64,000 nt of DNA from Malacoraja senta. Taxonomy: Eukaryota. The DNA lies in NCBI GenBank assembly GCA_038087875.1, contig CM075997.1:5704001-5768000 (forward strand), read 5' to 3'. How positions within the stretch are numbered: the first letter of the stretch is position 1; each line of letters begins with the position of its first letter. The notes beneath the pieces were generated by a model. The model was not told where the DNA came from and did not search any database. It saw only the letters and a list, made by a program, of their open reading frames with translations. The position numbers and the translations under genes are program-made. Positions 4,899 to 61,509 of this stretch are shown here, in pieces.

Positions 4899-5993
4899 TC
4901 ACTGGTTTGCTTCCAGTTCCTCGTGCTGGCGAGAGCAAGAACAGGGAGATACGGGACCTGAATGTGTGGCTCAGGAACTGGTGCACGGGGCAGGGATTTA
5001 GATTCTTAGATCACTGGGATCTGTTTTGGAGTAAGGGGGAACTGTACAAAAGGGACGGATTGCATCTTAACAGGTGGGGGACCAGCATTTTGGCAGGCAG
5101 GTTTACCACTGCTACACAGGTGGTTTTAAACTGAATAAGTGTGGTGGGGTGTCAAATGGGATAGTCGAGGATGGAGTTAAAGGGAAAGGGTTTCTTAAAT
5201 GTGTGAGCAGAGAGAGGTGTAAAACGAGGGTAGAAGCAATAGGTAGCAAGGTGAAAAGTAACAGTGGCAGGCAGACAAATCCAGGGCAAAAATCAAAAAG
5301 GGCCATTTTTCAACATAATTGTATAAGGGCTAACAGTGTTGTAAAAACAAGCACGAAGGCTTTGTGTCTCAATGCAAGGAGCATTCGTAATAAGGTGGAT
5401 GAGTTGAATGTGCAGATAGCTATTAATGACTATGATATAGTTGGGATCACGGAGACATGGCTACAGGGTGACCAAGGCTGGGAGCTGAACATCCAGGGAC
5501 ATTCAATATTCAGGAGGGATGGACAGAAAGGAAAAGGAGGTGGGGTACCGTTGCTGGTTAGAAAGGAGATTAACGCAATAGAAAGGAAGGACATTAGCTT
5601 GGAGGATGTGGAATCGATTTGGGTAGTGCTGCGAAACACTAAGGGGCAGAAAACGCTAGTGGGAGTTGTGTACAGGCCAACTAACAGTAGTAGTGTAGTT
5701 GGGGATGGCATCAAACAGGAAATTAGAAATGCGTGCAACAAAGGTAAAACAGTTATAATGGGTGACTTCAATCTACATATAGATTGGGTGAATCAAATTG
5801 GCAGGGGTGCTGAGGAAGAGGATTTCTTGGAATGTATGCGGGATAGTTTTCTAAACCAACATGTAGAGGAACCAACGAGAGAGCAGGCTATTCTAGACTG
5901 GGTATTGAGCAATGAGGAAGGGTTAGTTAGCAGTCTTGTTGTGCGTGGCTCCTTGGGCAAGAGTGACCATAATATGGTTGAGTTCTTCATTAG
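4899..5993 (+). mobile_element. CR1 LINE host copy, 5' part (ORF1 esterase end plus ORF2 endonuclease)
   Basis: ...YKRDGLHLN... SGNH esterase end; LNARSIRNK, GITETW, MGDFN, SDHNMV apurinic endonuclease motifs; ends at ...VEFFIR. Confidence 0.9.
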
Positions 5994-8900
5994 AAACATA
6001 GAAACATAGAAAATAGGTGCAGGAGTAGGCCATTCGGCCCTTCGAGCCTGCACCGCCATTCGATATGATCATGGCTGATCATCCAACTCAGTATCCCAAC
6101 CCTGCCTTCTCTCCATACCCCCTGATCCCTTTAGCCACAAGGGCCACATCTAACTCCCTCTTAAATATAGCCAATGAACTGGCCTCAACTACCTTCTGTG
6201 GCAGAGAATTCCACAGATTCACCACTCTCTGTGTAAAAAATGATTTCCTCATCTCGGTCCTAAAAGTCTTCCCTCTTATCCTTAAACTGTGACCCCTAGT
6301 TCTGGACTTCCCAAACATCGGGAATAATCTTCCTGCATCTAGCCTGTCGAACCCCTTAAGAATTTTGTAAGTTTCTATAAGATCCCCCTTCAGTCTTCTG
6401 AATTCCAACGTGTACAAGCCGAGTCTATCCAGTCTTTCCTCATATGAAAGTCCTGCCACCCCAGGAATCAGTCTGGTGTACCTTCTCTGTACTCCCTCTA
6501 TGGCAACAATGTCTTTCCTCAGATTAGGAGACCAAAACTGTACGCGATACTCCAGGTGTGGTTACACCAAGACCCTGTACAACTGCAGTCGAACCTCCCT
6601 GCTCTTATACTCAAATCCTTTTGCTATGAATGCTAACATACCATTTGCTTTCTTCACTGCCTGCTGCACCAGCATTCCTACTTTCAATGACTGGTGTACC
6701 ATGACACCCAGGTCTCGTTGCATCTCCCCTTTTCCTAATCGGCCACCATTCAGATAATAGTCTATGTTCCTGTTTTTGCCACCAAAGTGGATAACCTCAC
6801 ATTTATCCACATTATACTGCATCTGCCATGCCTTTGCCCACTCACCCAACCTATCCAAGTCACTTTGCAGCCTCCTAGCATCCTCCTCACAGCTAATGTA
6901 ACCCCACTTTTTAAGAAGGGAGGGAGAAAGAAAACGGGGAATTACTTGGAGATGTTGCATTCAATTCCCTCATCCAGATCATTAATGTATATTGTAAATA
7001 GCTGGGATCCCAGCACTGAGCCTTGCGGTACCCCACTAGTCACTGCCTGCCATTCTGAAAAGGACCCGTTTACTCCTACTCTTTGCTTCCTGTCTGCCAG
7101 CCAGTTCTCTATCCACATCAATACTGAACCCCCAATACCATGTGCTTTAAGTTTGTATGCTAATCTCTTATGTGGGACCTTGTCGAAAGCCTTCTGAAAG
7201 TCCAGATATAACACATCCACTGGTTCTCCCTTATCCACTCTACTAGTTACATCCTCGAAAAATTCTATAAGATTCGTCAGACATGATTTACCTTTCATCA
7301 ATCCATGCTGACTTTGTCCAATGAGCTCACCACTTTCCAAATGTGCTGCTATCCCATCTTTAATAACTGACTCCAGAATTTTCCCCACCACCGATGTTAG
7401 ACTAACTGGTCTGTAATTCCCCGTTTTCTTTCTCCCTCCCTTCTTAAAAAGTGGGGTTACATTAGCTACCCTCCAGTCCTCAGGAACTACTCCAGAATCA
7501 CTAATGCATCCACTAATGCATCCACTATTTCTGCGGCTACTTCCTTATGTACTCTGGGATGCAACTTATCCGGCCCTGGGGTTTTGTCGGCCTTTAATCC
7601 ATTCAATTTACCTAACACCACTTCCCGGCTAACCTGGATTTCACTCAGTTCCTCCATCTCATTTAACCCCCGGTCCCTTGCTATTTCCGGCAGATTATTT
7701 GTGTCTTCCTTAGTGATGACAGAACCAAAGTAATTATTCAATTGGTCTGCCATGTCCTTGTTCCCCATGATCAATTCGCCTGTTTCTGACTGCAAGGGTC
7801 CTACATTTGTTTTAACTAATCTTTTCCTCTTGACATATCTATAAAAACTTTGGCAGTCAGTTTTTATGTTCCCTGCCAGTTTTCTTTCATAATCTATTTT
7901 CCCTTTCCTAATTAAGCCTTTTGTCCTCCTCTGCTGGACTCTGAATTTCTCCCAGTCCTCTGGTAGGCTGCTTGTTCTGGCTAATTTGTAGGCTTCCTCT
8001 TTTGTTTTGATACTATCCCTGATTTCCCTTGTTATCCACGGATGCACTACCTTCCCTAATTTATTCTTTTGCCAAACTGGGATGAACACTTGTTGTAGTT
8101 CACACATGCAGTTTTTAAATGCCTTCCATTGCATATCCACCGTCAACCCTTTAAGAATCATTGGCCAATTCATGTCTCATACCCTCAAAGTCACCTTTCT
8201 TTAAGTTCAGGACCTTTGTTTCTGAATTAACAATGTCACTCTCCATCCTAATGAAGAACTCAACCATATTATGGTCACTCTTGCCCAAGGGGCCACGCAC
8301 AACAAGACTGCTAACTAACCCTTCCTCATCACTCAATACCCAGTCTAGAATAGCCTGCTCTCTCGTTGGTTCTTCTACATGTTGGTTTAGAAAACTATCC
8401 CGCATACATTCCAAGAAATCCTCTTCCTCAGCACCCCTGCCAATTTGATTCACCCAATCTATATGTAGATTGAAGTCACCCATTATAATGGTTTTACCTT
8501 TGTTGCATGCGTTTCTAATTTCCTGTTTGATGCCATCCCCAACTCCACTACTACTGTTAGGTGGCCGGTACACCACTCCCACTAGCGTTTTCTGCCCCTT
8601 AGTGTTTCGCAGCTCTACCCATATCGATTCCACATCCTCCAAGCTAATGTCCTTCCTTTCTATAGCGTTAATCTCCTCTCTAACCAGCAACGCTACCCCG
8701 CCTCCTTTTCCTTTCTGTCTATCCCTCCTGAATATTGAATATCCCTGAATGTTCAGCTCCCAGCCTTGGTCAGTCACCCTGGGGCCATGTCTCTGTGATC
8801 CCAACTATATCATATTCATTAATAACTATCTGCACATTCAACTCATCCACCTTATTACGAATGCTCCTTGCATTAAGATACAAAGCCTTCAGGCTTGTCT

Positions 8901-10390: not shown

Positions 10391-12410
10391 ATGGAGAGTG
10401 ACATAATTAATTCAGAAACAAGGGTTCTGAACTTAAAGAAAGGTAACTTTGAGGGTATGAGACGTGAATTGGCCAAGATAGACTGGCAATTGATTCTTAA
10501 AGGGATGACGGTGGATATGCAATGGAAGGCATTTAAAGGCTGCATGGATGAACTACAACAATTGTTCATCCCAGTGTGGCAAAAGAATAAATCAGTGAAG
10601 GTAGTGCATCCGTGGATAACAAGGGAAATCAGGGATAGTATCAAAACAAACGATGAAGCATACAAATTAGACAGAAAAAGCAGCCTACCAGAGGACTGGG
10701 AGACATTCAGAGTCATGCAGAGGGGGACAAAGGGATTAATTAGGAAAGGGAAAATAGATTATGAAAGAAAACTGGCAGGGAACATAAAAACTGACTGCAA
10801 AAGTTTTTATAGATATGTGAAGAGAAAAAGATTAGTTAAAACAAATGTAGGTCCCTTGCAGTCAGAAACAGGTGAATTGATCATGGGGAACAAGGACATG
10901 GCAGACCAATTGAATAACTACTTTGGTTCACTAAGGAAGACATAAATAATCTGCCGGAAATAGCAGGGGACCGGGGTCAAATGAGATGGAGGAACTGAGT
11001 GAAATCCAGGTTAGCCGGGAAGTGGTGTTAGGTAAATTGAATGGATTAAAGGCCGATAAATCCCCAGGGCCAAATAGGCTGCATCCCAGAGTACTTAAAG
11101 AAGTAGTCCCAGAAATAGTGGATGCATTAGTGATAATTTTTCAAAACTCTTTAGATTCTAGAGTAGTTGCTGAGGATTGGAGGGTAGCAGATGTAACCCC
11201 ACTTTTTAAAAAGGGAGGGAGAGAGAAAACGGGGAATTACAGACCATTTAGTCTAACATCGGTAGTGGGGAAACTGCTAGAGTCCGTTATTAAAGATGGG
11301 ATAGCAGCACATTTGGAAAGTGGTGAAATCATTGGACAAAGTCAGTATGGATTTATGAAAGGTAAATCATGTCTGACGAATGTTATAGAATTTTTCGAGG
11401 ATGTAACTAGTAGAGTGGATATGGGAGAACCAGTGGATGTGTTATATCTGGAATTTCAGAAAGCTTTCCACAAGATCCAACATAAGAGATTAGTATACAA
11501 ACTTAAAGCACACGGTATTGGGGGTTCAGTATTGATGTGGATAGAGAACTGGCTGGCAGACAGGAAGCAAAGAGTAGGAGTAAACGGGTCCTTTTCAGAA
11601 TGGCAGGCAGTGACTAGTGGGGTACCGCAAGGCTCAGTGCTGGGACCCCACCTATTTACAATATATATTAATGATTTGGACGAGGGAATTGAATGCAACA
11701 TCTCCAAGTTTGCGGATGACACGAAGCTGGGGGCAGTGTTAGCTGTGAGGAGGATGCTAGGAGGCTGCAAGGTGACTTGGATAGGTTGGGTGAGTGGGCA
11801 AAGGCATGGCAGATGCAGTATAATGTGGATAAATGTGAGGTTATCCACTTTGGTGGCAAGAACAGGAAAGTAGACTATTATCTGAATGGTGGCCGATTAG
11901 GAAAAGGGAGATGCAACAAGACCTGGGTGTCATAGTACACCAGTCATTGAAAGTAGGCATGCAGGTGCAGCAGGCAGTGAAGAAAGCGAATGGTATGTTA
12001 GCATTCATAGCAAAGACTGGATAGACTTGGCTTGTACTCGCTAGAATTTAGAAGATTGAGGGGGGATCTTATAGAAACTTACAACATTCTTAAGGGGTTG
12101 GACAGGCTAGATGCAGGAAGATTGTTCCCGATATTGGGGAAGTCCAGAACAAAGGGTCACAGTTTAAGGATAAGGGGCAAATCGTTTAGGACCGAGATGA
12201 GAAAAACATTTTTCACACAGAGAGTGGTGAATCTCTGGAATTCTCTGCCACAGAAGGTAGTTGAGGCCAGTTCATTGGCTATATTTAAGAGGGAGTTAGA
12301 TGTGGCCCTTGTGGCTAAAGGTATCGGGGGGTATGGAGAGAAGGCAGGTACAGGATACTGAGTTTAATGATCAGCCATGATCATATTTTCTATGTTTCTA
12401 TGTTTCTATG
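10391..12410 (+). mobile_element. CR1 LINE host copy, 3' part (ORF2 linker plus RT)
   Basis: Starts MESDIINSET, the direct continuation of ...VEFFIR at 5993; [10 protein letters not shown] and FADDTKL motifs; (TTTCTATG)n tail. Confidence 0.9.
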
Positions 12411-17170: not shown

Positions 17171-17290
17171 GATGATGAAGTTGTTCTTCAATGTACCACA
17201 AGCATTATCAAATCGCAGATTAAGCTCTGCCTTGCTGCTGAAGGATTTGGAAATCGACTCTGTTTCCTTGAACCAACATCAAATGCTAAG
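17171..17290 (+). CDS. RYR1: Ryanodine receptor (RyR1-like) exon equivalent to human RYR1 exon 2
   Basis: ttgacag|GATGATGAAG...AATGCTAAG|gtattt; 120 nt; [40 protein letters not shown], matching the RyR N-terminal domain; EPTSNA is RyR1-type. Confidence 0.95.
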
Positions 17291-17635
17291 GTATTTTACT
17301 TTGTGTAAAATTTGACCTGAAATTTTCTCCAGAAATTAGCATAGTTGTAGCAGAGTGGTTACAGAGAATCTGGGAGGATTTGTATTACTCAACTACTTTA
17401 TTCTGTGATTAGGCCCTTGACTTTGAATTTACCAAACCATTTGTGCCACTCCGAGTTCTGTTTGTCAAAATTCCATTAAATTAATTTCTTGTGTAAAAGT
17501 CCAGAGCACGAGTTACTTTGATGTACGCCATTCTAGAATTTGCATAAATGTCATTGAATCATCAAGTCATATAGCACAGAGATGGGCCCTTTGGCCTAAC
17601 TCATCCCTTCAGACCAAGATTCCCTATCCAAGCTA

Positions 17636-18180
17636 ACATAGAAACATAGAAAATAGGTGCAGGAGGAGGTCATTCGGCCCTTCGAGCCAGCACCGCCATT
17701 AATTGTGATCATGGCTGATCGTCCCCAATCAATAACCCGTGCCTGCCTTCTCCCCATATCCCTTGATTCCACTAGCCCCTAGAGCTCTATCTAACTCTCT
17801 TAAATCCATCCAGTGATTTGGCCTCCACTGCCCTCTGTGGCAGGGAATTCCACAAATTCACAACTCTCTGGGTGAAAAAGTTTTTTCTCACCTCAGTCTT
17901 AAATGGCCTTCCCGTTATTTTATATGTTTCTATACGATTCCCCCTCATCCTTCTAAACTGCAGTGAATACAAGCCTAGTCTTTTCAATCTTTCCTCATAT
18001 GACAGTCCCGCCATCCCAGGGATCAATCTCGTGAACCTACGCTGAACTGCCTCAATCAGAAAGATGTCCTTCCTCAAATTAGGAGACCAAAACTGTACAC
18101 AATACTCCAGATGTTGTCTTACCAGAGCCCTATACAACTGCAGAAGTACTTCTTTACTCCTACACTGAAATCCTCTTGTT
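17636..18180 (-). mobile_element. CR1 3' fragment
   Basis: LEYCVQFWSP...FFTQRVVNLWNSLP peptide; ACATAGAA tail. Confidence 0.9.
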
Positions 18181-19814
18181 ATGCTCTCATACTGCCAAAT
18201 TTCTTTAAGATGGTACATTTAATAAATATTGTTATTTTACCTGCATCAACTACTTCATCTGATAGATCATTCAATAAATCCACCACCCTTGTGAAAAAGG
18301 TGTAAATGAGCTTTATGCTGTACCTAGACTCAAAATTGTTATTTTATATAAATAAAATAAGCAGTAATCTGCCGAGGACCTAGCAAGGACCTCCCTTATC
18401 TCTTCTATCTTTCTGGGATACCTGTGGGATTATCAGACCTTGGAGATTTATCTGCCTTTATTCACTCCAAATCTTATTTTTCTTTTGAATAGTTGAGATG
18501 TTCATTTTGCCTCACCCTTGCACAGATTGACCTTTAGGGGACATACACTTTCCCTGTTTACCATCTTATTCATAAAGTACTTATAAAATGCCTGTAGTAT
18601 TATCTCAGCAATGTGAACACCCTTTTATATTTCTACGTTCTAGCTAAATAGACTCATTCAATGAACCTACCAGGACTTCCTTTGTCAGTACTGCTTAGTG
18701 TGGGGTTAAGAGACGAGGGGCAGTTGTGTTTTTGAAACATCACGAGAAAATCACGATTGTATTTGGAGAGGATATTCTTGGAAGTTTGTTCAGAGAGGCC
18801 ACATGGGTAGAATTTAGAAATAAGAAGGGGATGTTTTGCAATTGAGGACTGTTGAGGAACATCCCCTTCTTATTTCTAAATTCTACCTATGTAGCCTTTC
18901 TGGACTCTTGACCAAGTGTATCCTAGGACATTGTGGGAAACCAGGGAAGAACTTCCCACCCCCAGGATACTGCTCTTCCTGGTGACCCTTTGCCACTTTG
19001 CCTGTCGTGTGGTGTGTCCAGCTTGCTAAATATGCTGTATGCATTTCTTACCATCGTGAATGCTCCATGATGAGTCCCTCCACAGTTGTAGCTGCGCAAT
19101 GTACTCAGTCAGAAGCTGCAGCTGAACTCACTTTCTGTACACAGTCTCACATTTTGCAAAAAAGCATTCAATGGCCCTTGCCTCTCCTGTTGGCCCCTTG
19201 GATCACCACTCAGTAATATCTTGTATTTTGGAGCATAGAAACATAGAAAATAGGTGCAGTAGGCCATTCGGCCCTTCGAGCCAGCAGCGCCATTCAATAT
19301 GATCATGGCTGATCATCCAAAATCATTACCCAGTTCCGGCTTTTTCCCCATATCCCTTGATTCCCGAAGCCCTGGGAGCCAAATCTAACTCTCTCTTGAA
19401 AACATCTTTTATATTTATTTTATTTTTATAATCCATAATGTGACTGGCCTCTCTTTGATATAAACATCAACAACTACACTGGTGATCTTTTTTTTCTCCA
19501 ACACTAAATAACTACAATCTTCTTTCTGGAAGAGTTAAACAAAGGAGGAAAATACTTACCGGAGCCAACACTCTGATTGCAGCACTCCAGGATCCACTAC
19601 AAAAGCATGCTGTGTATTCTGTGGGGTTTCTGTAATTGGATATGGTGGAAGTCCCTGTTGGGAGATGCTATCTGGCGAATGTGAGTACGTGCAATGTGTT
19701 TGCAGATGGTACACTGTAGATAAGTTGCACCTGTGGTGGAAAGAGTGATAGATGGAGGAGCAGGCAAGCTAACTTTGTCCTGTATGGTGTTGAGCTTTGA
19801 GTGTTGTTGGATCT

Positions 19815-20300
19815 GTAGAAACAAAGAACTACATATACTGGTTAATACACAAAAGGACACAGAGTACTGAAATAACTCAACAGGTCAGGCAGCATGTCTG
19901 GAGAACATGGATAGGTGACTTTTCGGGTGGAGACGTCTTCAAACAGTAAGGGGGGGGGGGTTGAAGAGTTGTGGATTGTGAAGCCAGAAGAAGAAAGTAG
20001 GGAGCGGGAGGGGAGAGATAGGTAGGAATCCAGGTGGGGCACAGGAGGGGGGAGAAAGGGGATGAGGTTTGGAGGGGGAGTTAATTAGAGGTTGCCTAAA
20101 ATTGGGGAATTCAATGTTCATACCCCATTTGGTTATAAGTAAGTGGAATATGAGGTGCTGTTCCTCCAGTTTGCATGTGGCCAAAGGTCAGTGTGCAAAT
20201 GGTCTGAAGAAGGCTCTCTATCCGATACATCACCAATCCACGTCTCCAGTAATGTTGCCCAATGCTGAGTTACTCCATCACTTTGTGACCTGTTGTTGGA
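19815..20300 (-). mobile_element. Penelope-like element fragment with an inverted terminal piece
   Basis: KLEEQHLIFHL...MNIEFPNFR (GIY-YIG C-terminus) on the minus strand; terminal repeat copies in both orientations. Confidence 0.7.
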
Positions 20301-20492: not shown

Positions 20493-20597
20493 AATGTGCC
20501 TCCAGACCTTGCAATCTGCAGCCTTGTCCTGGAGCAGTCGCTCTCTGTCCGAGCGCTGCAGGAAATGCTGGCCAACACCGTTGGAAAGGGCAATGAG
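20493..20597 (+). CDS. RYR1: RyR1-like exon equivalent to RYR1 exon 3
   Basis: tttacag|AATGTGCCT...AATGAG|gtatgt; 105 nt, phase 0; [35 protein letters not shown]. Confidence 0.95.
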
Positions 20598-27616: not shown

Positions 27617-30600
27617 ACATAGAAACATAGAAACATAGAAAGTAGGTGCGAGAGTAGACCACCAGGCCCATCGAGCCCGCACCGCCATTCGCTCATGGCT
27701 GAACACTAAACAGACACCCTTACCCACAAACAGTAGACACAAGACACAGAACACAAGACACTACCCTCCCCTTTATATCGCTATCACCCCTCTCCACCCC
27801 AAGAACCACGTGATCTCCTGGGGGAGGCAAAAAACCGGATAAAAACCCAGGTCCAATTCGGGAAAAAAATCCGGGAAATTCCTCTCCGACCCCAATCCAG
27901 GCGATCGACACTTGTCCAGGAGATCACTCAGGTCTTACTATACTAACCATACCTAGGTCCATATCCCTGCCCTCTCCCCGTAGCCCCTTATCCCCTTGGC
28001 AGCTAAAAAACCATCTATTTTAGACTTAAATATATTTAATGTTTCTGCTTCCACTGCTCCCTGGGGCAGTGAATTCCATAAATTAACCACCCTCTGGGTG
28101 AAGAAGTTCTTTCTCATCTCAGTTTTAAAAGAGCCCCCTCTTATTCTACAACTATGTCCCCTAGTTCTAGTTTCCCCGATCATTGGGAACATCCTCGGTG
28201 CATCCACCCGATCAAGGCCCCTCACGATCTTATATGTTTCAATGAGATCGCCTCTCATTCTTCTAAACTCCAAAGAGTAGAGTTCCAGCCTACTTAACCT
28301 TTCCTCATATGTCAATCCCCTCATTGCAGGAATTAATCTTGTAAACCTTCGCTGCACTGCCTCCAGGGCCAGTACATCCTTTCTTAAGTATGGACCCCAG
28401 AACTGTACACAGTATTCCAAATGTGGTCTCACTAATACTGTGTACAGCTGCAGCAAGACCTCCGTGTTTTTATACTCAATCCCCCTAGCAATAAAGGCCA
28501 AAACTCCATTGGCCTTCCTGATTGCTTGCTGCACCTGCATACTAACTTTTAGTGATTCATGTACTACTACCCCTAGATCCCTTTGCGTTGCATTACAACG
28601 CAGCTCCACCTCATTTAGAAAATAACTTGCCCTATCATTTTTTTTCCCAAAGTGAATGACGTCACATTTATTAGTATTAAATTTCATCTGCCAAGTTGTT
28701 GCCCACTCACCTAGCTTATCTATATCCTTTTGCAGACTCTTCCTATCCTCCTCATCCCCTACTTTTCCTCCCATTTTTGTATCGTCCGCAAATTTTGATA
28801 TATTACACTTGGTTCCCTCCTCCAAATCATTTATATAAATTGTGAACAACTGGGGTCCCAGCACCGACCCTTGCGGAACCCCGCTAGTTACTGGTTGCCA
28901 TCCCGAGTATGAACCATTTATCCCCACTCTCTGCTTCCTATTTGTTAGCCAATCCTCTGCCCATGCTAATATATTACCCCCAATCCCATAATTTTTTATT
29001 TTTAGCAATAGTCTCTTATGTGGCACCTTGTCAAAAGCCTTTTGGAAGTCCAAGTATACCACATCCATCGGTTCCCCTTTATCCACCCGGGTTGTTACTT
29101 CCTCAAAGAATTCGAGCAGATTCGTTAAACAGGACTTCCCCTTCACAAAACCATGCTGGTTCTGTCCGATGAAGTCATGTTTATCCAAGTGCCCCGTTAG
29201 TGTTTCTTTAATAATTGTCTCTAACATTTTACCCACCACCGATGTTAGACTAACCGGTCTATAGTTACCCGCCTTCTGTTTACTTCCTTTTTTAAATATA
29301 GGTGTTACATTGGCCATTTTCCAATCCACTGGGACCGTTCCTGCCTCCAGGGAGTTTTGGAAAATTATCACCAATGCATCCACAATCCCCACCGCTATCT
29401 CCCTCAAGACCCTTGGATGTAATCCATCAGGCCCAGGGGATTTATCCTCCTTCAGTCTCATTAATTTCCCTAATACCACCTCCTTGGTGATCTTAATAGT
29501 ATTTAGCTCCTCCATTCCTACCGCCCCCTGTTTATCCAGCGTTGGAATATTTTTTGTGTCTTCTATGGTGAAGACTGATACAAAATACTCGTTTAATGCC
29601 TTTGCCATTTCCATGTTCCCCACCAACAACTCTCCAGTCTCACCCTCCAATGGACCAACGTTCACCTTAGCCACCCTTTTTCTTTTTATATAGCTATAAA
29701 AACTCTTACTATTAGTTTTTATGTTGTTCGCTAAATTCCTTTCATAGTCTATTTTCCCCGTCTTAATTAATCTCTTAGTTATTTTTTGCTGACCTTTAAA
29801 TGCTTCCCAATCCTCTACCCTCCCACTATCTCTGGCTACCTTATATGCCCTTGCCTTCAGCCGAATACTATCCTTTATAGTTTTACTGAGCCATGGCTGA
29901 CTGTTCTTTCCCTTACCCCTTTTTTTCTTCATAGGAATAAATTTTTCTTGAAGGTTATACAGTAGATCCTTAAACGTACACCACTGCTCATGTACCGTCT
30001 TATTCTTGAGTCTGCTATCCCAGTCAACTTTGATCAGCTCAGTCCTCATACCTTCATAATCCCCCTTATTTAGACTAAGTACCCTAGCCTGAGTTTCAAC
30101 CTGCTCCCCTTCTATTTGAATATGGAATTCGACCATATTGTGGTCACTTGTTCCCAACGAGTCCCTAACTATGACATTTTTAATTAATCCTGCTTCATTA
30201 CACAGGACCAGATCCAAGATTGCCTCCCTCCTTGTCGGTTCTGTGACATACTGTTCTAGGAACCCGTCTCTAATACATTCTATAAACTCTTCCTCTAGTC
30301 TACCCTGCCCAGTTTGGTTTGCCCAATTAATATGAAAATTGAAGTCCCCCATGATTACAGCAGTTCCCTTTTTACATGCGTCAACTATTTGCAGATTTAT
30401 GTTCTGACTAACAGCGTCACAGCTATTTGGAGGTCTATAAATTACACCCACTAGTGTTTTTTTCCCCTTGTTATTCTCTATCTGTACCCAAGCTGTTTCA
30501 CTATCCTGATCCTTCAACGCAATATCCTTCCTCTCTATTGCCGTTATTCCCTCCCTTATTAAAAGGGCCACCCCTCCTCCCTTTCTTTCCTGTCTATCTT

Positions 30601-30987
30601 TTCTAATTGTCGAGTACCCCTCTATATTTAACTCCCAATCCTGATCCCCTTGCAGCCATGTCTCCGTAATGGCCACGATATCATAACTATATGTACTTAA
30701 TTGCACCGTTAATTCATTTATCTTATTTCGAATACTCCGTGCATTTAGATACAGCACTTTCAGATGATTTTTACTACCCTTCCTTTCTGTTTTTGCCCCT
30801 TTTACATCTAGAGCTTTATCTTCACACATTCTGGATCCTCCTGTCACATTTTGATTTTCCGTTTCCCCACTGATACCCTGCTCTATTTCCTCTACCCCTG
30901 CCGTTATTACCCCCCTTGATACCTCCCCCCCGCTACTTAGTTTAAAGACCTCTCTACTGCCCTAGTTATATGATTTGCCAGGACCCC
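27617..30987 (-). mobile_element. Young CR1 LINE, 5'-truncated inside ORF1
   Basis: (ACATAGAA)3 tail at 27617-27640; long 3'UTR; intact ORF2; last codons of ORF1 (GVLANHITRAVERSLN*) at ~30938-30987. Confidence 0.95.
27953..30847 (-). CDS. CR1 ORF2, endonuclease plus reverse transcriptase (964 aa, uninterrupted)
   Basis: LNARSIRNK, ITETW, MGDFN, SDHNMV (APE); [25 protein letters not shown] (RT); no stop or frameshift. Confidence 0.95.
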   Translation of the reverse strand: MTGGSRMCEDKALDVKGAKTERKGSKNHLKVLYLNARSIRNKINELTVQLSTYSYDIVAITETWLQGDQDWELNIEGYSTIRKDRQERKGGGVALLIREGITAIERKDIALKDQDSETAWVQIENNKGKKTLVGVIYRPPNSCDAVSQNINLQIVDACKKGTAVIMGDFNFHINWANQTGQGRLEEEFIECIRDGFLEQYVTEPTRREAILDLVLCNEAGLIKNVIVRDSLGTSDHNMVEFHIQIEGEQVETQARVLSLNKGDYEGMRTELIKVDWDSRLKNKTVHEQWCTFKDLLYNLQEKFIPMKKKRGKGKNSQPWLSKTIKDSIRLKARAYKVARDSGRVEDWEAFKGQQKITKRLIKTGKIDYERNLANNIKTNSKSFYSYIKRKRVAKVNVGPLEGETGELLVGNMEMAKALNEYFVSVFTIEDTKNIPTLDKQGAVGMEELNTIKITKEVVLGKLMRLKEDKSPGPDGLHPRVLREIAVGIVDALVIIFQNSLEAGTVPVDWKMANVTPIFKKGSKQKAGNYRPVSLTSVVGKMLETIIKETLTGHLDKHDFIGQNQHGFVKGKSCLTNLLEFFEEVTTRVDKGEPMDVVYLDFQKAFDKVPHKRLLLKIKNYGIGGNILAWAEDWLTNRKQRVGINGSYSGWQPVTSGVPQGSVLGPQLFTIYINDLEEGTKCNISKFADDTKMGGKVGDEEDRKSLQKDIDKLGEWATTWQMKFNTNKCDVIHFGKKNDRASYFLNEVELRCNATQRDLGVVVHESLKVSMQVQQAIRKANGVLAFIARGIEYKNTEVLLQLYTVLVRPHLEYCVQFWGPYLRKDVLALEAVQRRFTRLIPAMRGLTYEERLSRLELYSLEFRRMRGDLIETYKIVRGLDRVDAPRMFPMIGETRTRGHSCRIRGGSFKTEMRKNFFTQRVVNLWNSLPQGAVEAETLNIFKSKIDGFLAAKGIRGYGERAGIWT

Positions 30988-34005: not shown

Positions 34006-36109
34006 ATTACCAGAATGTTGCTTGGATTAGAAGTTTCATCTACAGGGAGAGATTGAATAGACTTGGATTGTTTTCTCTGGGACGTTGGAGGTTGAGGGGA
34101 GACTTGATAGAGGTATATATAATTATTAGAGGCATAGATAGGGTAAATGATCAGAATCTTTTTCCCCAGGGTGGAAATGTCCAACACTAGAGGGCATAAC
34201 TATAAAGTGAGATTATGACATTTAATGGAGAGGTGTGGGGCAGGTTATTTTATACAGAGAGTGGTGGGAGCCTGGAATGAATTGCCAGGGGTGGTGGTGG
34301 AGGTACAAATGATAGTGGCATTTAAGAGGCTTTTAAATAGGCACTTGAATGTGCAGGGAATAGGGGGATATCATGTAGAGGCAGGTGAGGTCAGTTTAAT
34401 TTGGCATCGTGTTCTGCATTAACATTGTGGGCTGAAGTGCCCATCCATGTGCTGTACTGTTCTATCTTCTATGTTAAGCAATGCTGGATAGTTGTAAACG
34501 TACGTGTCATCCTGAACGGATCCAAATTATGAAGGGTGGAAGTTGAAGAGAAATCCACGTGGGATAAATTAAAGACATTTATGCAAGAAAGATGCTTTTG
34601 CTTTCCTTCTCTTCCTGCATTTTTTCCTTTAATTCATTTTTCTTTATTCATACAGTTGGCCTGCGGGGCATACCGAACAGACTCATTTTTAGCAACACAT
34701 TACACAGTTGGCTTTATCAAGTCATCCAGTCTTGCCCTATCATACATATTATCTTTATTACACCCCCCCTCCCACCACCACCCCCTTATATCTACCTAAA
34801 CTTATTTGGTTTCTTGCTTTCTCAGTTCTGATGAAAATTCCAGAGCTCAAAAGTTGACTTTTGTTCTTTTTACAGATGCTACCTAACATGCAGAGTGTTT
34901 CCAAAAGTTTCTGTTTTAGTTAAACACTTGTATTTTCAATGTAATATTGTTAATACTCTGATTGGTCTTAGCTGATTAATAAATATCAAGTTTGTAGATG
35001 TTTTGCAGTGATTAATAACATTTATTTTCCACAGTGAAGACACTAGATATAGGTACATTATTACAGTTAAGTCATATCCATTCTTTAAATAAGATTAATC
35101 CTGTACAGATACATCTATCTTCTCTAGGGACTTTGCAGCTATATTACTTTTGAAGGTGGTAGTAAATTATTATCAAATGGCTTAGACTTAAATCAAAATG
35201 TAGTTGTGCATTCCTTGAATCATCAAAGACTCCATCAAAACAGTGTGGAGCTATTTGACTTAAATATACAGACCTGACGAAAATACAATACATCCTTTCC
35301 CACTACATCAATCCAGAAAACACCCTAGACCTCAATAAATGTCAACAGGTTTTATAGTTCGCTCACTGTTAAAATGCAGCATAGCTTCTGGGCTGAAGAT
35401 TGAGTGGACAAAAAATGTTGAGGTTAGTTGATTGATATTTTCACCTAATTTATGAATTATAAAATGTTATAAATAATGGAAAAATATAGCAAAATACTAG
35501 ATATATTTAGGTCATATACTACTTGTGCATACTGGTCAATTGTATATTTTATTTACTTTGGTGTCATTTGCTGATGTATTTTGTTTTATGTGAGTAACTG
35601 AATGTTATACCATCAGAGCTATGTTGTAATAAATTTTAAATAACAATATTTGCCTGAAATATCTATCTACTATGCCTTAGATTTGATTAACAAACATAAT
35701 TTAAAAGATATATTGATAACTAAAGTACATTGCATGTTTTTTGGATCACTCGCTGCATTGAACAAAATATTTATGAAGGTGATTAGAAATAAAATAAATA
35801 TATGTCAGCAGTTAGCAGGAATCAAATTACCCTTGTTTCAAGTGATTAACTGATCAGCAGTCTGAAATATTCTATTGTACCATTATCGGGTATTATAATT
35901 TATTACATTTGTGTATATGAACCTTTGTAATAACTGTTTTAGAAATTCATGTTGTCAAAGTTGGTGTGTGTGTGTGTGTATACGTGTTTGTATCAGAGAG
36001 CGAGTGGTTGTGGGGGCAGTTACCCTTAATGCAAGTGGAACAGTCCAGAAAGTGGTGCAAATTGAAAATAATGTACTTTTTCTGCTTTTCATTTTATCCA
36101 CTATGCAAG

Positions 36110-36130
36110 CCTCTTGATCTGGACAAATGG
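36110..36130 (+). CDS. RYR1: Putative 21-nt alternative microexon of RyR1 (PLDLDKW), similar to RYR2 exon 4 (QVDVEKW)
   Basis: Pyrimidine tract ttttctgcttttcattttatccactatgcaag|CCTCTTGATCTGGACAAATGG|gtatgt; phase 0/0; peptide pattern xxDxDKW falls at the position where RyR2 has QVDVEKW. Confidence 0.8.
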
Positions 36131-37809
36131 GTATGTTTGTGTGTCTGTATTACTCTGATTTTGTTGCTGTGCCCTTGATTTAAACAATGTTAAATCCCTT
36201 TTCCAGGTAAATAGTCCTCAATGCATGAGCTCTAACATATTTCACTTGCATCATAAAGGCCCTGTTCATATCTTGCTCAAACATTGCACTTATGTTACCA
36301 TAATATGTTACTTTTCTCTAAATTATTGTTCTTTATGGTTTTGTTTTTCTCAATGAAGTAAAATCTTAGAATTGATCATTCAAGAAGTACAATTTCTTGA
36401 CATAGAGCCTTACTTTTTTGATCATAATTAGAACCACTAGGTTTTGTTCCGAATTTGTTCCTTTTTTTTTATACTCTCTCCATTTCACTATATTTATTAC
36501 TTCTACCACTGGCCAAACAGAGTGTGCGTTACTGAAATTGAGTGAAGGTGGGTCCAGCTGGTAATGCACCTCACCTGATCAGAACATGTTTTTTTTAATA
36601 GGGATTTGTTGTTTTATTTTTCTTGAGAAACTGAAAAACATTGCAAAGGAATGTTAAGTCAATGTTCAGAAATTCCCATAGCAAGAAGTTATTTTGCTTC
36701 ATATCTTTGAAGGAGATGTTTACATTATGTTGGAAAGCATATTGTGGTCTCTGATCAATCCAATAGTATGTATAGTATGTAATAGATTTCTATTTGTGTG
36801 CCTTTAGATCAACATATGACATTTGCATTCAATATACATCTGGATCTGACTTGGATGCTCATGTGTTAAATATTCAAAATTCACTTGCACTTGTCCAGCT
36901 GTATAAGGTCATATTATTTAAATGGTGTGTTCTGATTTTAGGAGGTATATTGTTGATTTCAAAAGCTATCTTATGGACACAATTTTCATTGTCCTCTTCA
37001 ACTTTTCCCCTCCTTTGCAGATCAACAACTTTCTGGTACCTCAACAAAAAAAACCCAATGAGCTATTTAGTCAAATTACATCTATCACATAGTGAAACAA
37101 ATAATGCAGGGGATGCTTCATAGTTAGCCAACTCAGGGATGACTATTTCTTCCTTTCTGCCTTTTTGCTTCTTGAATTGGGGGTCTTCAGATAAAGAAAA
37201 ACAATTCTTTTTACACAAACTCAGCTGTTGGCTAGGAGTACACAATATTATAAAAACAGAATATAGGAAAAATGTCCATACAGAAGGAGACGGATTATGC
37301 CAGTGTTGGCCGAAGGATCACTCAGTCTTTTCATTTGAGGTTTGGAAAAGTGAGGTAATAGTCTGTTCATTGAGATGTATGTTTTCTATATGATATACTG
37401 CAGTTCGGGATAACTTAGAAGAGCTTATGGCTACATGAGGGTCCTTCATCATTCCATAAGATCATCACTTGCCTTCATTTCCCTTCCCTAGAACTATTTC
37501 TCTTGACTTTTATTTGGCTCAAAAATCTATTCATCTCAGTTTAAAATTAAATGACTGAACATTTGCAATCCATTTTGGTAGAGAACAAATAACGTATTCT
37601 GTTATGACTCATTCTGTCTAACCCTCTCAGAATGACATAAATTGTGATGACTTTTAATGTTTGCTTTTCTGAGATCCAAAGAGTAAAGATCCATTCTATT
37701 TGAGTGCTCATTATGTGATTGCATCCAGGAAATTAAATTAAATTGATACTACCTCTCCTGCCAAACATCCATTTACCTGGTAATATGGAAGGAACGTTGT
37801 CCCTTTTTT

Positions 37810-50795: not shown

Positions 50796-50870
50796 TCTTC
50801 TCAAGGAGGAGGGCACAGAACCCTTTTGTATGGTCATGCTATTCTACTCAGGCATTCTCATAGTGGCATG
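50796..50870 (+). CDS. RYR1: RyR1-like exon equivalent to RYR1 exon 4
   Basis: atgcag|TCTTCTCAA...GGCATG|gtaagt; 75 nt; [25 protein letters not shown] (SSQGGG is RyR1-type). Confidence 0.95.
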
Positions 50871-52162: not shown

Positions 52163-52241
52163 TATTTATGTTGTTTGACAACCTCAAGGTCTCTAACAGA
52201 TAAATTATCCTTTGATGTTGGACTGCAAGAAGATGCTTCAG
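52163..52241 (+). CDS. RYR1: RyR1-like exon equivalent to RYR1 exon 5
   Basis: tttccag|TATTTATGT...GCTTCAG|gtattt; 79 nt; [26 protein letters not shown](G). Confidence 0.95.
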
Positions 52242-52713: not shown

Positions 52714-52911
<198 letters not shown>

Positions 52912-53878: not shown

Positions 53879-55488
53879 GAAATGGTGTTGGAAAGACTGA
53901 TGGGACTGAAGGCTGATAAATCCCCAGGGCCTGATGGTCTGCATCCCAGGGTACTTAAGGAAGTGGCTCTAGAAATCGTGGATGCATTGGTGATAATTTT
54001 CCAATGTTCTATTGCCTCAGGATCAGTTCCTGTGGATTGGAGGGTAGCTAATGTTATCCCACTTTTTAAGAAAGGCGGGAGAAAGAAAAAAGGGAATTAT
54101 AGACCAGTTAGCCCGACTGGTCGTGGGGAAGATGCTGGAGTCAATTATAAAAGATGAGATAGCTGAACATTTGGAGAGCAGTAACAGGATCCGTCCGAGT
54201 CAGCATGGATTTACGAAGGGGAAATCATGCTTGACTAATCTTCTGGAATTTTTTGAAAATGTAACTAGGAAAATGAACAAGGGAGAGCCAGTGGATGTAG
54301 TGTACCTGGACTTTCAGAAAGCATTTGATAAGGTCCCACATAGGAGATTAGTGGACAAAATTAGGGCACATGGTATTGCGGATAGAGTGCTGACATGGAT
54401 AGAGAAGTGGTTGGCAGACAGGAAACAAAGAGTAGGGATTAACGGGTCCCTTTCAGAATGGCAGGCAGTGACTAGTGTGGTACCGCAAGGCTCGGTGGTG
54501 GGACCGCAGCTATTTACAATATACATCAATGATTTGGATGAAGGGATTCAAAGTAACATCAGCAAATTTGCAGGTGACACAAAGCTGGGTGGCAGTGTGA
54601 ACTGTGAGGAGGATGCTATGAGAGTGCAGGGTGACTTGGACAGGTTGGGGGAGTGGGCAGATGCATGGCGGATGAAGTTTAATGCGCATAAATGTGAGGT
54701 TATCCACTTTGGTAGCAAAAACAGGAAGGCAGATTACTATCTAAATGGCGTCGGGTTGGGAAAAGGGGAAGTACAACAGGATCTGGGGGTCCTTGTACAT
54801 CAGTCTATGAAAGTAAGCATGCAGGTACAGCAGGCAGTGAAGAAAGCGAATGGCTTGTTGGCCTTTATAACAAGAGGAATCGAATATAGGAGCAAAGAGG
54901 TCCTTCTGCAGTTGTACAGAGCCCTAGTGAGACCACACTTGGAGCATTGTGTACAGTTTGGGTCCCCTAATTTGAGGAGGGACATTCCTGCTATTGAGGG
55001 AGTGCAGCGTAGGTTTACAAGGTTAATTCCCGGGATGGCGGGATTGTCATATGCTGAGAGAATGGAGCAGCTGGGCTTGTACACTCTGGAGTTTAGAAGG
55101 ATGGGAGGGGCTCATTGAAACATATAAGATTGTTAAGGGTTTGGACAAGCTAGAGGCCGGAAACATGTTCCCGATGTTGGGGGAGTCCAGAACCAGGGGC
55201 CACAGTTTAAGAATAAGGAGTAAGCCATTTAGAACGAAGACGAGGAAACACTTTTTCTCACAGAGAGGTGAGTCTGTGGAATTCATGCCTCAGAGGCTGG
55301 TGGAGGCGGGTTCTCTGGATGCTTTCAAGAGAGAGCTAGATAGGGCTCTTAAAAATAGCGGAGTCAGGGGATATGGGGAGAAGGCAGGAACGGGGTACTG
55401 ATTGGGGATGATCAGCCATGATCACATTGAATGGCAGTGCTGGCTCGATGGGCCGAATGGCCTACTCCTGCACCTATTGTCTATTGTC
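53879..55488 (+). mobile_element. CR1 LINE, 5'-truncated RT with few frameshifts, inserted into a Penelope-type terminal fold-back
   Basis: [30 protein letters not shown] (D to G); (CTATTGT)n tail; CAGAG duplicated at 53874-53878 and 55488-55492. Confidence 0.9.
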
Positions 55489-61292: not shown

Positions 61293-61392
61293 CATTTATC
61301 TTGTGCCAGCGGAGATTTGCAAGTGGATGCCTCTTTTATGCAGACTCTTTGGAATATGAACCCTACCTGCTCAGGCTGTGAGCTTGCTGAAG
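61293..61392 (+). CDS. RYR1: RyR1-like exon equivalent to RYR1 exon 7
   Basis: ttccaaag|CATTTATCT...GCTGAAG|gttagt; 100 nt; [33 protein letters not shown](G); [16 protein letters not shown] is RyR1-type. Confidence 0.95.
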
Positions 61393-61509
61393 GTTAGTAA
61401 TTAATTGTGACATTTGGGGGGGGGGGGGGTGGGGGGGAAGGAAAGATAATCCTTTCATTAAAAATTATACTAATTCATAGTAGAACAACGAAATGACCAA
61501 GCACATCTA

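What the first reader, a model, noticed from the sequence alone, without database searches (positions are those of the whole stretch)
36080..36240. RYR2-exon-4-like 21-nt microexon (PLDLDKW) in a RyR1 gene, with regulated-microexon motifs
Seen: AAG|CCTCTTGATCTGGACAAATGG|GTATGT at 36110-36130, in phase 0 between exon 3 (...GKGNE) and exon 4 (SSQGGG...). It has a pyrimidine tract, a UGC 6 nt before the exon, a TGCATG at 36222-36227, a (TG)n tract upstream and UG-rich sequence downstream. It lies in a ~3-kb TE-free island (~34900-37400) of an otherwise TE-saturated 30-kb intron. Known: RyR2 has a 21-nt exon (QVDVEKW) at this position in the N-terminal domain loop, and canonical human RYR1 joins exon 3 directly to SSQGGG. 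UGC near the 3' splice site is the SRRM3/4 microexon signature, and downstream UGCAUG is an RBFOX enhancer. Inference: this is an ancestral gnathostome RyR microexon kept in this RyR1 and probably tissue-regulated (neural versus muscle, possibly electric organ or electroreceptor), changing an N-terminal loop. Gene predictors easily miss it.
Basis: partly seen in the sequence, partly recalled or inferred. Interest (0 to 1): 0.8.

Follow-up and report, generated by a model that had tools for sequence, protein, structure and literature searches.

The report
Conserved 21-nt RyR1 microexon
The 21-base segment is almost certainly a real seven-amino-acid mini-exon of the muscle calcium-release channel RyR1, but the same mini-exon is already annotated in dozens of fish, reptile and amphibian RyR1 genes and in RyR2 and RyR3, so it is a correct yet ordinary find.

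Summary
The sequence is exactly as described: AAG|21 nt|GTATGT at 36110-36130, in phase 0 between RyR1 exon 3 (20493-20597) and exon 4 (50796-50870), encoding PLDLDKW. It is not chance. It is the only one of 88,733 stop-free 7-mers in the window that scores 25 or more against RyR2 QVDVEKW, and the next-best of 56 AG/GT-flanked candidates in the intron scores 5.

The same cassette at the same junction is annotated in 47 full-length RyR1 models, including zebrafish, carp, eel, cichlid, salmonids and electric fishes (AVDLDKW) and axolotl (LDLDKW). Truncated reptile and bird models carry GVDLDKW or GVDLGKW. RyR2 has [Q/L/H]VDVEKW (published exon 4, alternatively spliced) and RyR3 has LSDLSEW or KADHE[Q/K]W. 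Skip isoforms exist in the same species. Placental RyR1 and invertebrate RyRs lack it.

So the "ancestral RyR microexon" reading holds and extends to all three paralogues. The regulatory reading (SRRM3/4 and RBFOX motifs, neural or electric-organ use) is not supported. The motifs are weak and not conserved, and published RyR2 exon 4 is included in heart and skipped in brain.

Inclusion in this species was not shown. A relative's 9.9-kb RNA contig confirms exon 2-3 splicing, but its next bases were not displayed.

The parts
17171..17290 (+). RyR1 exon 2 (DDEVVLQC...TSNAK, 120 nt)
   Evidence: tblastn with RyR N-terminal fragments. The exon 2-exon 3 GT..AG joint is present in RNA contigs of a related species, runs X25 and X27.
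20493..20597 (+). RyR1 exon 3 (NVPPDL...ANTVGKGNE, 105 nt, ends in phase 0; 5' splice site GAG|GTATGT)
   Evidence: It lies on the 9,885-nt spliced RNA contig of run X27 (record 17).
35964..35979 (+). (GT)n run about 130 nt upstream of the microexon. No function shown.
   Evidence: Sequence. Not found at the orthologous loci.
36071..36109 (+). 3' splice region: pyrimidine-rich tract with no AG from about -55 to -3, ending in AAG; TGC at -27 and -6
   Evidence: Pyrimidine fraction is 0.77 at -25..-4, against 0.59-0.77 for the constitutive exons 2-5.
36110..36130 (+). 21-nt phase-0 cassette microexon encoding PLDLDKW
   Evidence: Orthologous exons with the same AG|...|GTA flanks lie in skink L001 17750-17770, cyprinid L002 20845-20865, owl L003 6986-7006 and goodeid L004 4843-4863. 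In codons 3-7, four variable sites are synonymous and one change is an amino-acid replacement.
36131..36136 (+). 5' splice site GTATGT (TGG|GTATGT)
   Evidence: Identical hexamer to exon 3's donor. GTATGT or GTAGG in the four orthologues.
36222..36227 (+). TGCATG (RBFOX-type hexamer) 92 nt downstream; relevance unproven
   Evidence: About 3% of 100-nt windows here contain one. Within 300 nt downstream it is present only in the skink among the four orthologous loci.
50796..50870 (+). RyR1 exon 4 ([25 protein letters not shown], 75 nt, phase 0 at both ends)

Best explanation
The segment is a genuine cassette microexon of the RyR1 gene. It is orthologous to the 7-residue exon annotated between exon 3 and the SSQGGG exon in RyR1 of teleosts, sauropsids and axolotl. 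It is paralogous to RyR2 exon 4 and to a RyR3 cassette. It is recognised through an ordinary strong pyrimidine tract, an AG acceptor and a GTATGT donor. When included, it adds x-[V/L]-D-[L/V]-[D/E]-K-W to the loop that follows the exon-3-encoded helix of the N-terminal beta-trefoil domain (Pfam PF08709), without shifting the frame.

Shown: the sequence, phase, splice signals, homology and a protein-level pattern of substitutions. Inferred: that it is spliced into at least part of the RyR1 mRNA in this species, that it is alternative (as in teleost annotations and RyR2), and that it tunes channel gating through the N-terminal domain.
For: Exact anatomy.

Statistical uniqueness.

Homologues at the same junction: 47 full-length and 9 partial RyR1 models carry the insert fully spliced to SSQGGG. 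Examples are Danio rerio X3 P0396, Ctenopharyngodon P0392, Arapaima P0417, Anguilla P0459 (ALDLDKW), Hippocampus P0465 and axolotl P0486. Skip isoforms exist in the same species (Labrus P0164 and P0194; Oryzias P0180 and P0203). Sauropsid models carry GVDLDKW or GVDLGKW (P0022, P0056, P0062, P0069). RyR2 has [Q/L/H]VDVEKW and RyR3 has LSDLSEW or KADHE[Q/K]W.

Genomic orthologues keep the AG/GT flanks and change mostly at synonymous sites.

The literature describes RyR2 exon 4 as 7 amino acids and alternatively spliced by tissue (PMC9033130).

The gene is transcribed and spliced as modelled in a close relative (exon 2-3 joint on a 9,885-nt contig).

In an AlphaFold model of zebrafish RyR1 residues 1-225, the insert falls in an unstructured, low-confidence stretch (87-109) between helix 75-87 and strand 111-117.
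Against: No read or contig shows the exon 3-microexon-exon 4 junction in this species or its relatives. The one contig that could show it was not displayed past exon 3. The only chondrichthyan RyR1 retrieved (Callorhinchus milii isoform X6, P0446) lacks the insert, though it stands for a cluster of 17 sequences that I could not list. The acceptor is AAG, the least favoured of the common acceptor trinucleotides. The structural model is poor (mean pLDDT 58; the first attempt gave 34), so the loop placement rests partly on recalled crystal-structure literature.
Confidence: 0.85

Rival explanations
1. It is a relic exon: homologous to the RyR microexon but no longer spliced in this lineage, surviving only by slow sequence decay.
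For: No junction evidence was obtained. The Callorhinchus representative isoform lacks it. Several non-teleost representatives (gar, bowfin, bichir relative, lungfish, Xenopus, caecilian) also lack it.
Against: The open frame, AG, GTATGT and pyrimidine tract are all intact, and five of seven residues match the teleost and sauropsid consensus (DLDKW) after several hundred million years. Cross-species differences are mostly synonymous. Neighbouring intron sequence shows no conservation at all, so neutral survival of exactly these 21 nt plus both splice sites is unlikely. A representative isoform without the exon does not mean the species lacks it; teleosts have both forms.
Confidence: 0.1
2. It is a neural or electrosensory SRRM3/4-dependent microexon with an RBFOX downstream enhancer, included mainly outside ordinary muscle.
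For: Length is 21 nt. TGC lies at -6 and -27. TGC occurs within 40 nt upstream in all five orthologous loci examined. TGCATG lies at +92.
Against: These motifs are common by chance (19% of 15-nt windows contain TGC; 3% of 100-nt windows contain TGCATG). TGCATG is not conserved (1 of 4 orthologues within 300 nt). There is no conserved intronic block. The paralogous RyR2 exon 4 is included in heart and skipped in cerebrum, cerebellum, pituitary, adrenal and islets (PMC9033130). RyR1 is chiefly a skeletal-muscle gene. No paper in the library links RyR microexons to SRRM4.
Confidence: 0.1
3. It is a chance open 21-mer with AG/GT flanks that merely resembles RyR2 exon 4.
For: 56 such AG|21 nt|GT open candidates exist in this 30-kb intron.
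Against: It scores 25 against 5 or less for all the others, and is 1 of 88,733 7-mers in the whole window. It lies in the correct intron, strand and phase. Orthologous exons exist at the same place in four fetched genomic loci.
Confidence: 0.01

Closest known systems
RyR1 N-terminal 7-residue cassette annotated in RefSeq/Ensembl models of teleosts (AVDLDKW, e.g. Danio rerio ryanodine receptor 1 isoform X3), axolotl (LDLDKW) and sauropsids (GVDLDKW)
   Same: Same gene, same junction (after exon 3, before SSQGGG), same phase, same AG|...|GTA flanks. Same 21-nt length as the four fetched genomic orthologues. Five of seven residues identical (DLDKW); L at position 2 also in eel and axolotl.
   Different: First residue is P instead of A/G/D/T. 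The flanking introns are far longer here (15.5 and 14.7 kb, against 0.15-4.7 kb upstream in the fetched loci). Inclusion in mRNA was not shown for this species.
RyR2 exon 4 (7 amino acids, QVDVEKW in mammals), alternatively spliced: 'cardiac-type' includes it, 'islet-type' skips it together with exon 75 (reviewed in PMC9033130)
   Same: Homologous position, length, phase and the x-hydrophobic-D-hydrophobic-acidic-K-W pattern. A cassette exon with annotated skip isoforms.
   Different: A paralogue, not an orthologue. In RyR2 the next exon begins KFMMKTAQGGG rather than SSQGGG. Tissue pattern and functional effect are published for RyR2 only.
RyR3 cassette at the same junction (LSDLSEW in mouse cDNA B7ZMP2, bear and squirrel; KADHE[Q/K]W in teleosts; PSDLSRW in a Xenopus model)
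   Same: Same junction, 7 residues, terminal W, acidic centre. Present and absent isoforms are both annotated.
   Different: More divergent sequence. I found no literature description.

Membership tests
RyR exon-4-type N-terminal microexon (RyR1/RyR2/RyR3 cassette) | Lies in the intron between the exon ending ...ALQEMLAN(x)n-E/G and the exon beginning (SS/TA/AA)QGGGHRT, on the sense strand | tested here: met
   It lies 15.5 kb after exon 3 and 14.7 kb before exon 4.
RyR exon-4-type N-terminal microexon (RyR1/RyR2/RyR3 cassette) | 21 nt (7 codons), phase 0-0, no stop, canonical AG and GT | tested here: met
RyR exon-4-type N-terminal microexon (RyR1/RyR2/RyR3 cassette) | Peptide pattern x-[V/L/I]-D-[L/V]-[D/E]-[K/Q]-W | tested here: met
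   PLDLDKW against AVDLDKW (45 models), ALDLDKW, ELDLDKW, GVDLDKW and QVDVEKW. BLOSUM62 score of 25 is unique in the window.
RyR exon-4-type N-terminal microexon (RyR1/RyR2/RyR3 cassette) | Actually spliced into mRNA between exon 3 and exon 4 | tested here: inconclusive
   a relative's spliced 9,885-nt contig covers exons 2 and 3 and runs on, but the letters after exon 3 were not listed. The polyA RNA run X23 had no depth on exons 2 and 3.
RyR exon-4-type N-terminal microexon (RyR1/RyR2/RyR3 cassette) | Alternative (both inclusion and skipping isoforms) | not tested
   Shown only for other species' annotations (Labrus, Oryzias) and for RyR2 in the literature.
SRRM3/4 (eMIC)-dependent neural microexon | UGC-containing element between the pyrimidine tract and the 3' splice site | tested here: inconclusive
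   TGC at -6 and -27. TGC within 40 nt upstream in 5 of 5 orthologous loci. The chance level is high (19% per 15-nt window) and the tracts are CTGCC-type pyrimidine runs.
SRRM3/4 (eMIC)-dependent neural microexon | Neural or endocrine-specific inclusion | not testable with these tools
   No tissue RNA data were reachable. The paralogous RyR2 exon 4 is skipped in brain and islets (PMC9033130), which argues against this.
RBFOX-enhanced cassette exon | (U)GCAUG within about 300 nt downstream, conserved among orthologues | tested here: not met
   Present in the window (+92) and the skink (+208). Absent within 300 nt in the cyprinid, goodeid and owl. No conserved downstream intronic block.

The most novel reading that the evidence does not exclude
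The cassette is a pan-vertebrate alternative module that predates the RyR1/RyR2/RyR3 split and was lost only from mammalian RyR1. In this skate it acts as a tissue or fibre-type switch (for example fast versus slow muscle, or electric organ versus muscle). It would retune channel gating by lengthening the flexible loop of the N-terminal domain. That loop, by my recollection of Lobo et al. 2011, can replace a beta strand when RyR2 exon 3 is deleted. No searchable paper describes the RyR1 or RyR3 versions.
Probability: 0.25. Interest if true: 0.5.

Novelty: new member of a known kind. Interest (0 to 1): 0.3.

Why it matters
For annotation, RyR1 models of this species should carry an isoform with the extra seven residues. 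For RyR biology, one cassette sits at the same N-terminal loop in all three vertebrate paralogues and is missing only from mammalian RyR1. That suggests an old, reusable way of tuning the N-terminal gating domain, a hot spot for malignant-hyperthermia and CPVT mutations. Non-mammalian RyR1 could therefore serve as a model for what RyR2 exon 4 does. None of this is a new kind of element: the exon is already in public gene models of many species.

Tried and rejected
1. RNA evidence. Exon 2-3 splicing was seen in a relative, but the loose end after exon 3 was not among the rows shown. The only raw polyA run (X23) had no RyR1 reads at exons 2 and 3.

2. I tried to recover the relative's 9.9-kb contig product from the protein collection, using P0286 (length window 1,063-3,383 aa). 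It was not there.

3. The Callorhinchus RyR1 locus (P0446), Mauremys RyR2 (P0161) and Phyllostomus RyR3 (P0198) were not on record for the look-up of encoding contigs. No chondrichthyan genomic comparison was therefore possible.

4. AlphaFold on a 37-row alignment gave mean pLDDT 34. A more diverse 67-row alignment gave 58. These are usable only to say the insert lies in an unstructured, low-confidence stretch.

5. The first mixed-fragment alignment (A1) was misaligned and was not used.

6. Searching papers for the peptide strings, for RyR plus microexon, and for Ryr3 plus Srrm4 found nothing specific. A zebrafish ryr survey (PMC3262159) does not mention splicing of this region.

7. The upstream KFMLSKL candidate (35943-35963) was rejected as chance. 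It is in the wrong order relative to RyR2 KFMMKTA, and its donor lies inside a (GT)n run.

8. The 'TE-free island' could not be tested properly. Only an intra-window self-comparison was possible.

9. I did not type a spliced protein into any tool, so the species' own exon 3-microexon-exon 4 peptide was never searched.
Full report
**Observation**

The window carries the 5' part of a RyR1 gene on the + strand:

| Exon | Coordinates |
|---|---|
| 2 | 17171-17290 |
| 3 | 20493-20597 |
| 4 | 50796-50870 |
| 5 | 52163-52241 |
| 6 | about 52772-52884 |
| 7 | 61293-61394 and beyond |

Exons 4-7 carry RyR1-type residues ([21 protein letters not shown]). Over 198 residues the best matches are RyR1 of Erpetoichthys (184), Amia (183), Callorhinchus (181) and gar (180). 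Other follow-up notes of this scan call the genome a skate; I did not check that.

At 36110-36130 the sequence reads AAG|CCTCTTGATCTGGACAAATGG|GTATGT, which encodes PLDLDKW in phase 0 between exon 3 (...GKGNE) and exon 4 (SSQ...). The acceptor follows a pyrimidine tract as rich as those of the constitutive exons (0.77 C/T), with no AG for about 55 nt. The donor hexamer is identical to exon 3's. The TGC at -6, the TGCATG at 36222-36227, the (GT)n run and the G/T-rich downstream sequence are all there.

**Is it more than chance?**

The 30-kb intron holds 56 stop-free AG|21 nt|GT candidates. This one scores 25 (BLOSUM62) against RyR2 QVDVEKW and the runner-up scores 5. Of 88,733 stop-free 7-mers in all six frames of the window, it alone reaches 25. 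Chance is excluded.

**What it is**

An exhaustive profile search with exon 3 and three word-indexed searches returned several hundred RyR N-terminal models. Reading what follows exon 3 in each gives a clear picture.

- **RyR1 with the insert.** A 7-residue insert ending in W sits exactly at this junction, fully spliced to SSQGGG, in 47 full-length and 9 partial models.
  - The usual form is AVDLDKW.
  - Species include Danio rerio isoform X3 (P0396), grass carp, Labeo, Arapaima, Denticeps, catfishes, salmonids, cichlids, seahorse, cod and eel (ALDLDKW).
  - The electric fishes Paramormyrops, Brachyhypopomus and Electrophorus also carry it.
  - Axolotl has a 6-residue LDLDKW (P0486).
- **Sauropsid RyR1.** Tortoise, gecko and skink models carry GVDLDKW and an owl model carries GVDLGKW (P0022, P0056, P0062, P0069; names). 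These models run on into the next intron.
- **Both forms in one species.** Inclusion and skip isoforms are annotated in Labrus (P0164, P0194) and Oryzias (P0180, P0203).
- **RyR2.** It has [Q/L/H]VDVEKW, with skip forms such as P0051 and P0179.
- **RyR3.** It has LSDLSEW in mouse cDNA B7ZMP2 (P0191), bear and squirrel, and KADHE[Q/K]W in teleosts, again with skip forms.
- **Models without the insert.** Placental RyR1 joins exon 3 directly to SSQGGG. Invertebrate RyRs show no such insert. The representative isoforms of Callorhinchus (P0446), gar, bowfin, Erpetoichthys, lungfish, Xenopus and a caecilian also lack it. A representative is only one isoform per cluster.

The cassette is therefore older than the RyR1/RyR2/RyR3 split, and the window's exon is its RyR1 orthologue.

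**Genomic comparison**

I fetched four orthologous loci: skink L001, cyprinid L002, owl L003 and goodeid L004. In each, the 21 nt is flanked by a pyrimidine tract plus AG, and by GTATGT or GTAGG.

- In codons 3-7 (D-L-D-K-W), four variable sites across the five species are synonymous (GAT/GAC, CTG/TTG, GAC/GAT, AAA/AAG) and one change is a replacement (owl D to G).
- Codon 2 switches between L and V, and codon 1 is a small residue (P, G or A).
- This is the signature of selection on the peptide.
- Outside the exon and the first bases of the donor, nothing aligns between the window and the other loci. Two teleosts share only 45 nt.

**Expression**

Runs labelled as a related species (organism C) hold spliced RyR1 RNA contigs. 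The exon 2-exon 3 joint (GT..AG, skipping 3,202 nt) is present in X25 and X27. X27 has a 9,885-nt contig that covers exons 2 and 3 and continues downstream. The gene model is therefore transcribed as drawn.

Inclusion of the microexon in this lineage is inferred, not shown.

**Mechanism**

This is a conventional cassette exon defined by good splice signals inside two very long introns.

- The seven residues extend the segment after the exon-3-encoded helix of the N-terminal domain (Pfam PF08709 on these fragments).
- In an AlphaFold model of zebrafish RyR1 residues 1-225 (mean pLDDT 58), the insert lies in an unstructured, low-confidence stretch (87-109) between helix 75-87 and strand 111-117.
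- In RyR2, a flexible loop inserts into the beta-trefoil and rescues the fold when exon 3 is deleted. That deletion alters the threshold at which Ca2+ release terminates (summarised in PMC3691467). That this is the loop holding exon 4 is my recollection of Lobo et al. 2011, not something I read here.
- The RyR2 isoform lacking exons 4 and 75 responds more strongly to caffeine after cADPR in HEK293 cells (PMC9033130).

The likely role is modest tuning of gating through the N-terminal vestibule. This step is inference.

**Regulation**

- TGC occurs in 19% of 15-nt windows here, and TGCATG in 3% of 100-nt and 9% of 300-nt windows.
- TGCATG within 300 nt downstream recurs only in the skink.
- G/T richness downstream is not shared (0.38-0.60 in the other loci, against 0.70 here).
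- RyR2 exon 4 is included in atrium, ventricle and kidney. It is skipped in cerebrum, cerebellum, pituitary, adrenal and islets, the reverse of an SRRM4-type neural exon.

Which factor controls the RyR1 cassette, and in which tissue, is unknown.

**Novelty and verdict**

However, the exon is already present in public RefSeq and Ensembl models of many vertebrates, and its RyR2 counterpart is published. I found no paper describing the RyR1 or RyR3 versions, so a short comparative note could be written. It is a new member of a known kind, of modest interest.

Noticed in passing
window 35943-35963 (+): A second AG|21 nt|GT open candidate, KFMLSKL, lies 167 nt upstream of the microexon. It recalls RyR2 KFMMKTA (start of RyR2 exon 5), but the order is wrong and its donor lies in a (GT)n run. 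Probably chance.
   Followed up: partly
L002 20565-20585 and 20845-20865 (Sinocyclocheilus grahami RyR1 locus): The AVDLDKW microexon and about 200 nt of flank occur twice, 280 nt apart with identical sequence. This is either a tandem duplication of the microexon or an assembly artefact.
   Followed up: no
window 17584-18188, 19157-19400, 19880-20000: These stretches of intron 2 have summed contig depths in the thousands to tens of thousands in relatives' transcriptome contigs, and hundreds to more than 1,500 reads in a polyA RNA run. They belong to abundantly transcribed repeat families.
   Followed up: no
window 27953-30847 (-); also 5074-6009 (+), 10986-11873 (+), 54051-55118 (+): A 964-aa open frame with endonuclease and reverse-transcriptase domains (a LINE) sits antisense in the same intron. 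Further RT or endonuclease fragments lie elsewhere in the window.
   Followed up: partly
proteins P0191, P0196, P0199 (RyR3 of mouse, bear, squirrel): Mammalian RyR3 has an annotated 7-residue cassette, LSDLSEW, at the same exon 3/exon 4 junction, with skip isoforms (P0090, P0202). I found no paper describing it.
   Followed up: partly
protein P0486 (Ambystoma mexicanum RyR1 isoform X4): The axolotl version of the cassette is six residues (LDLDKW) rather than seven. This suggests an 18-nt exon or a shifted acceptor.
   Followed up: no
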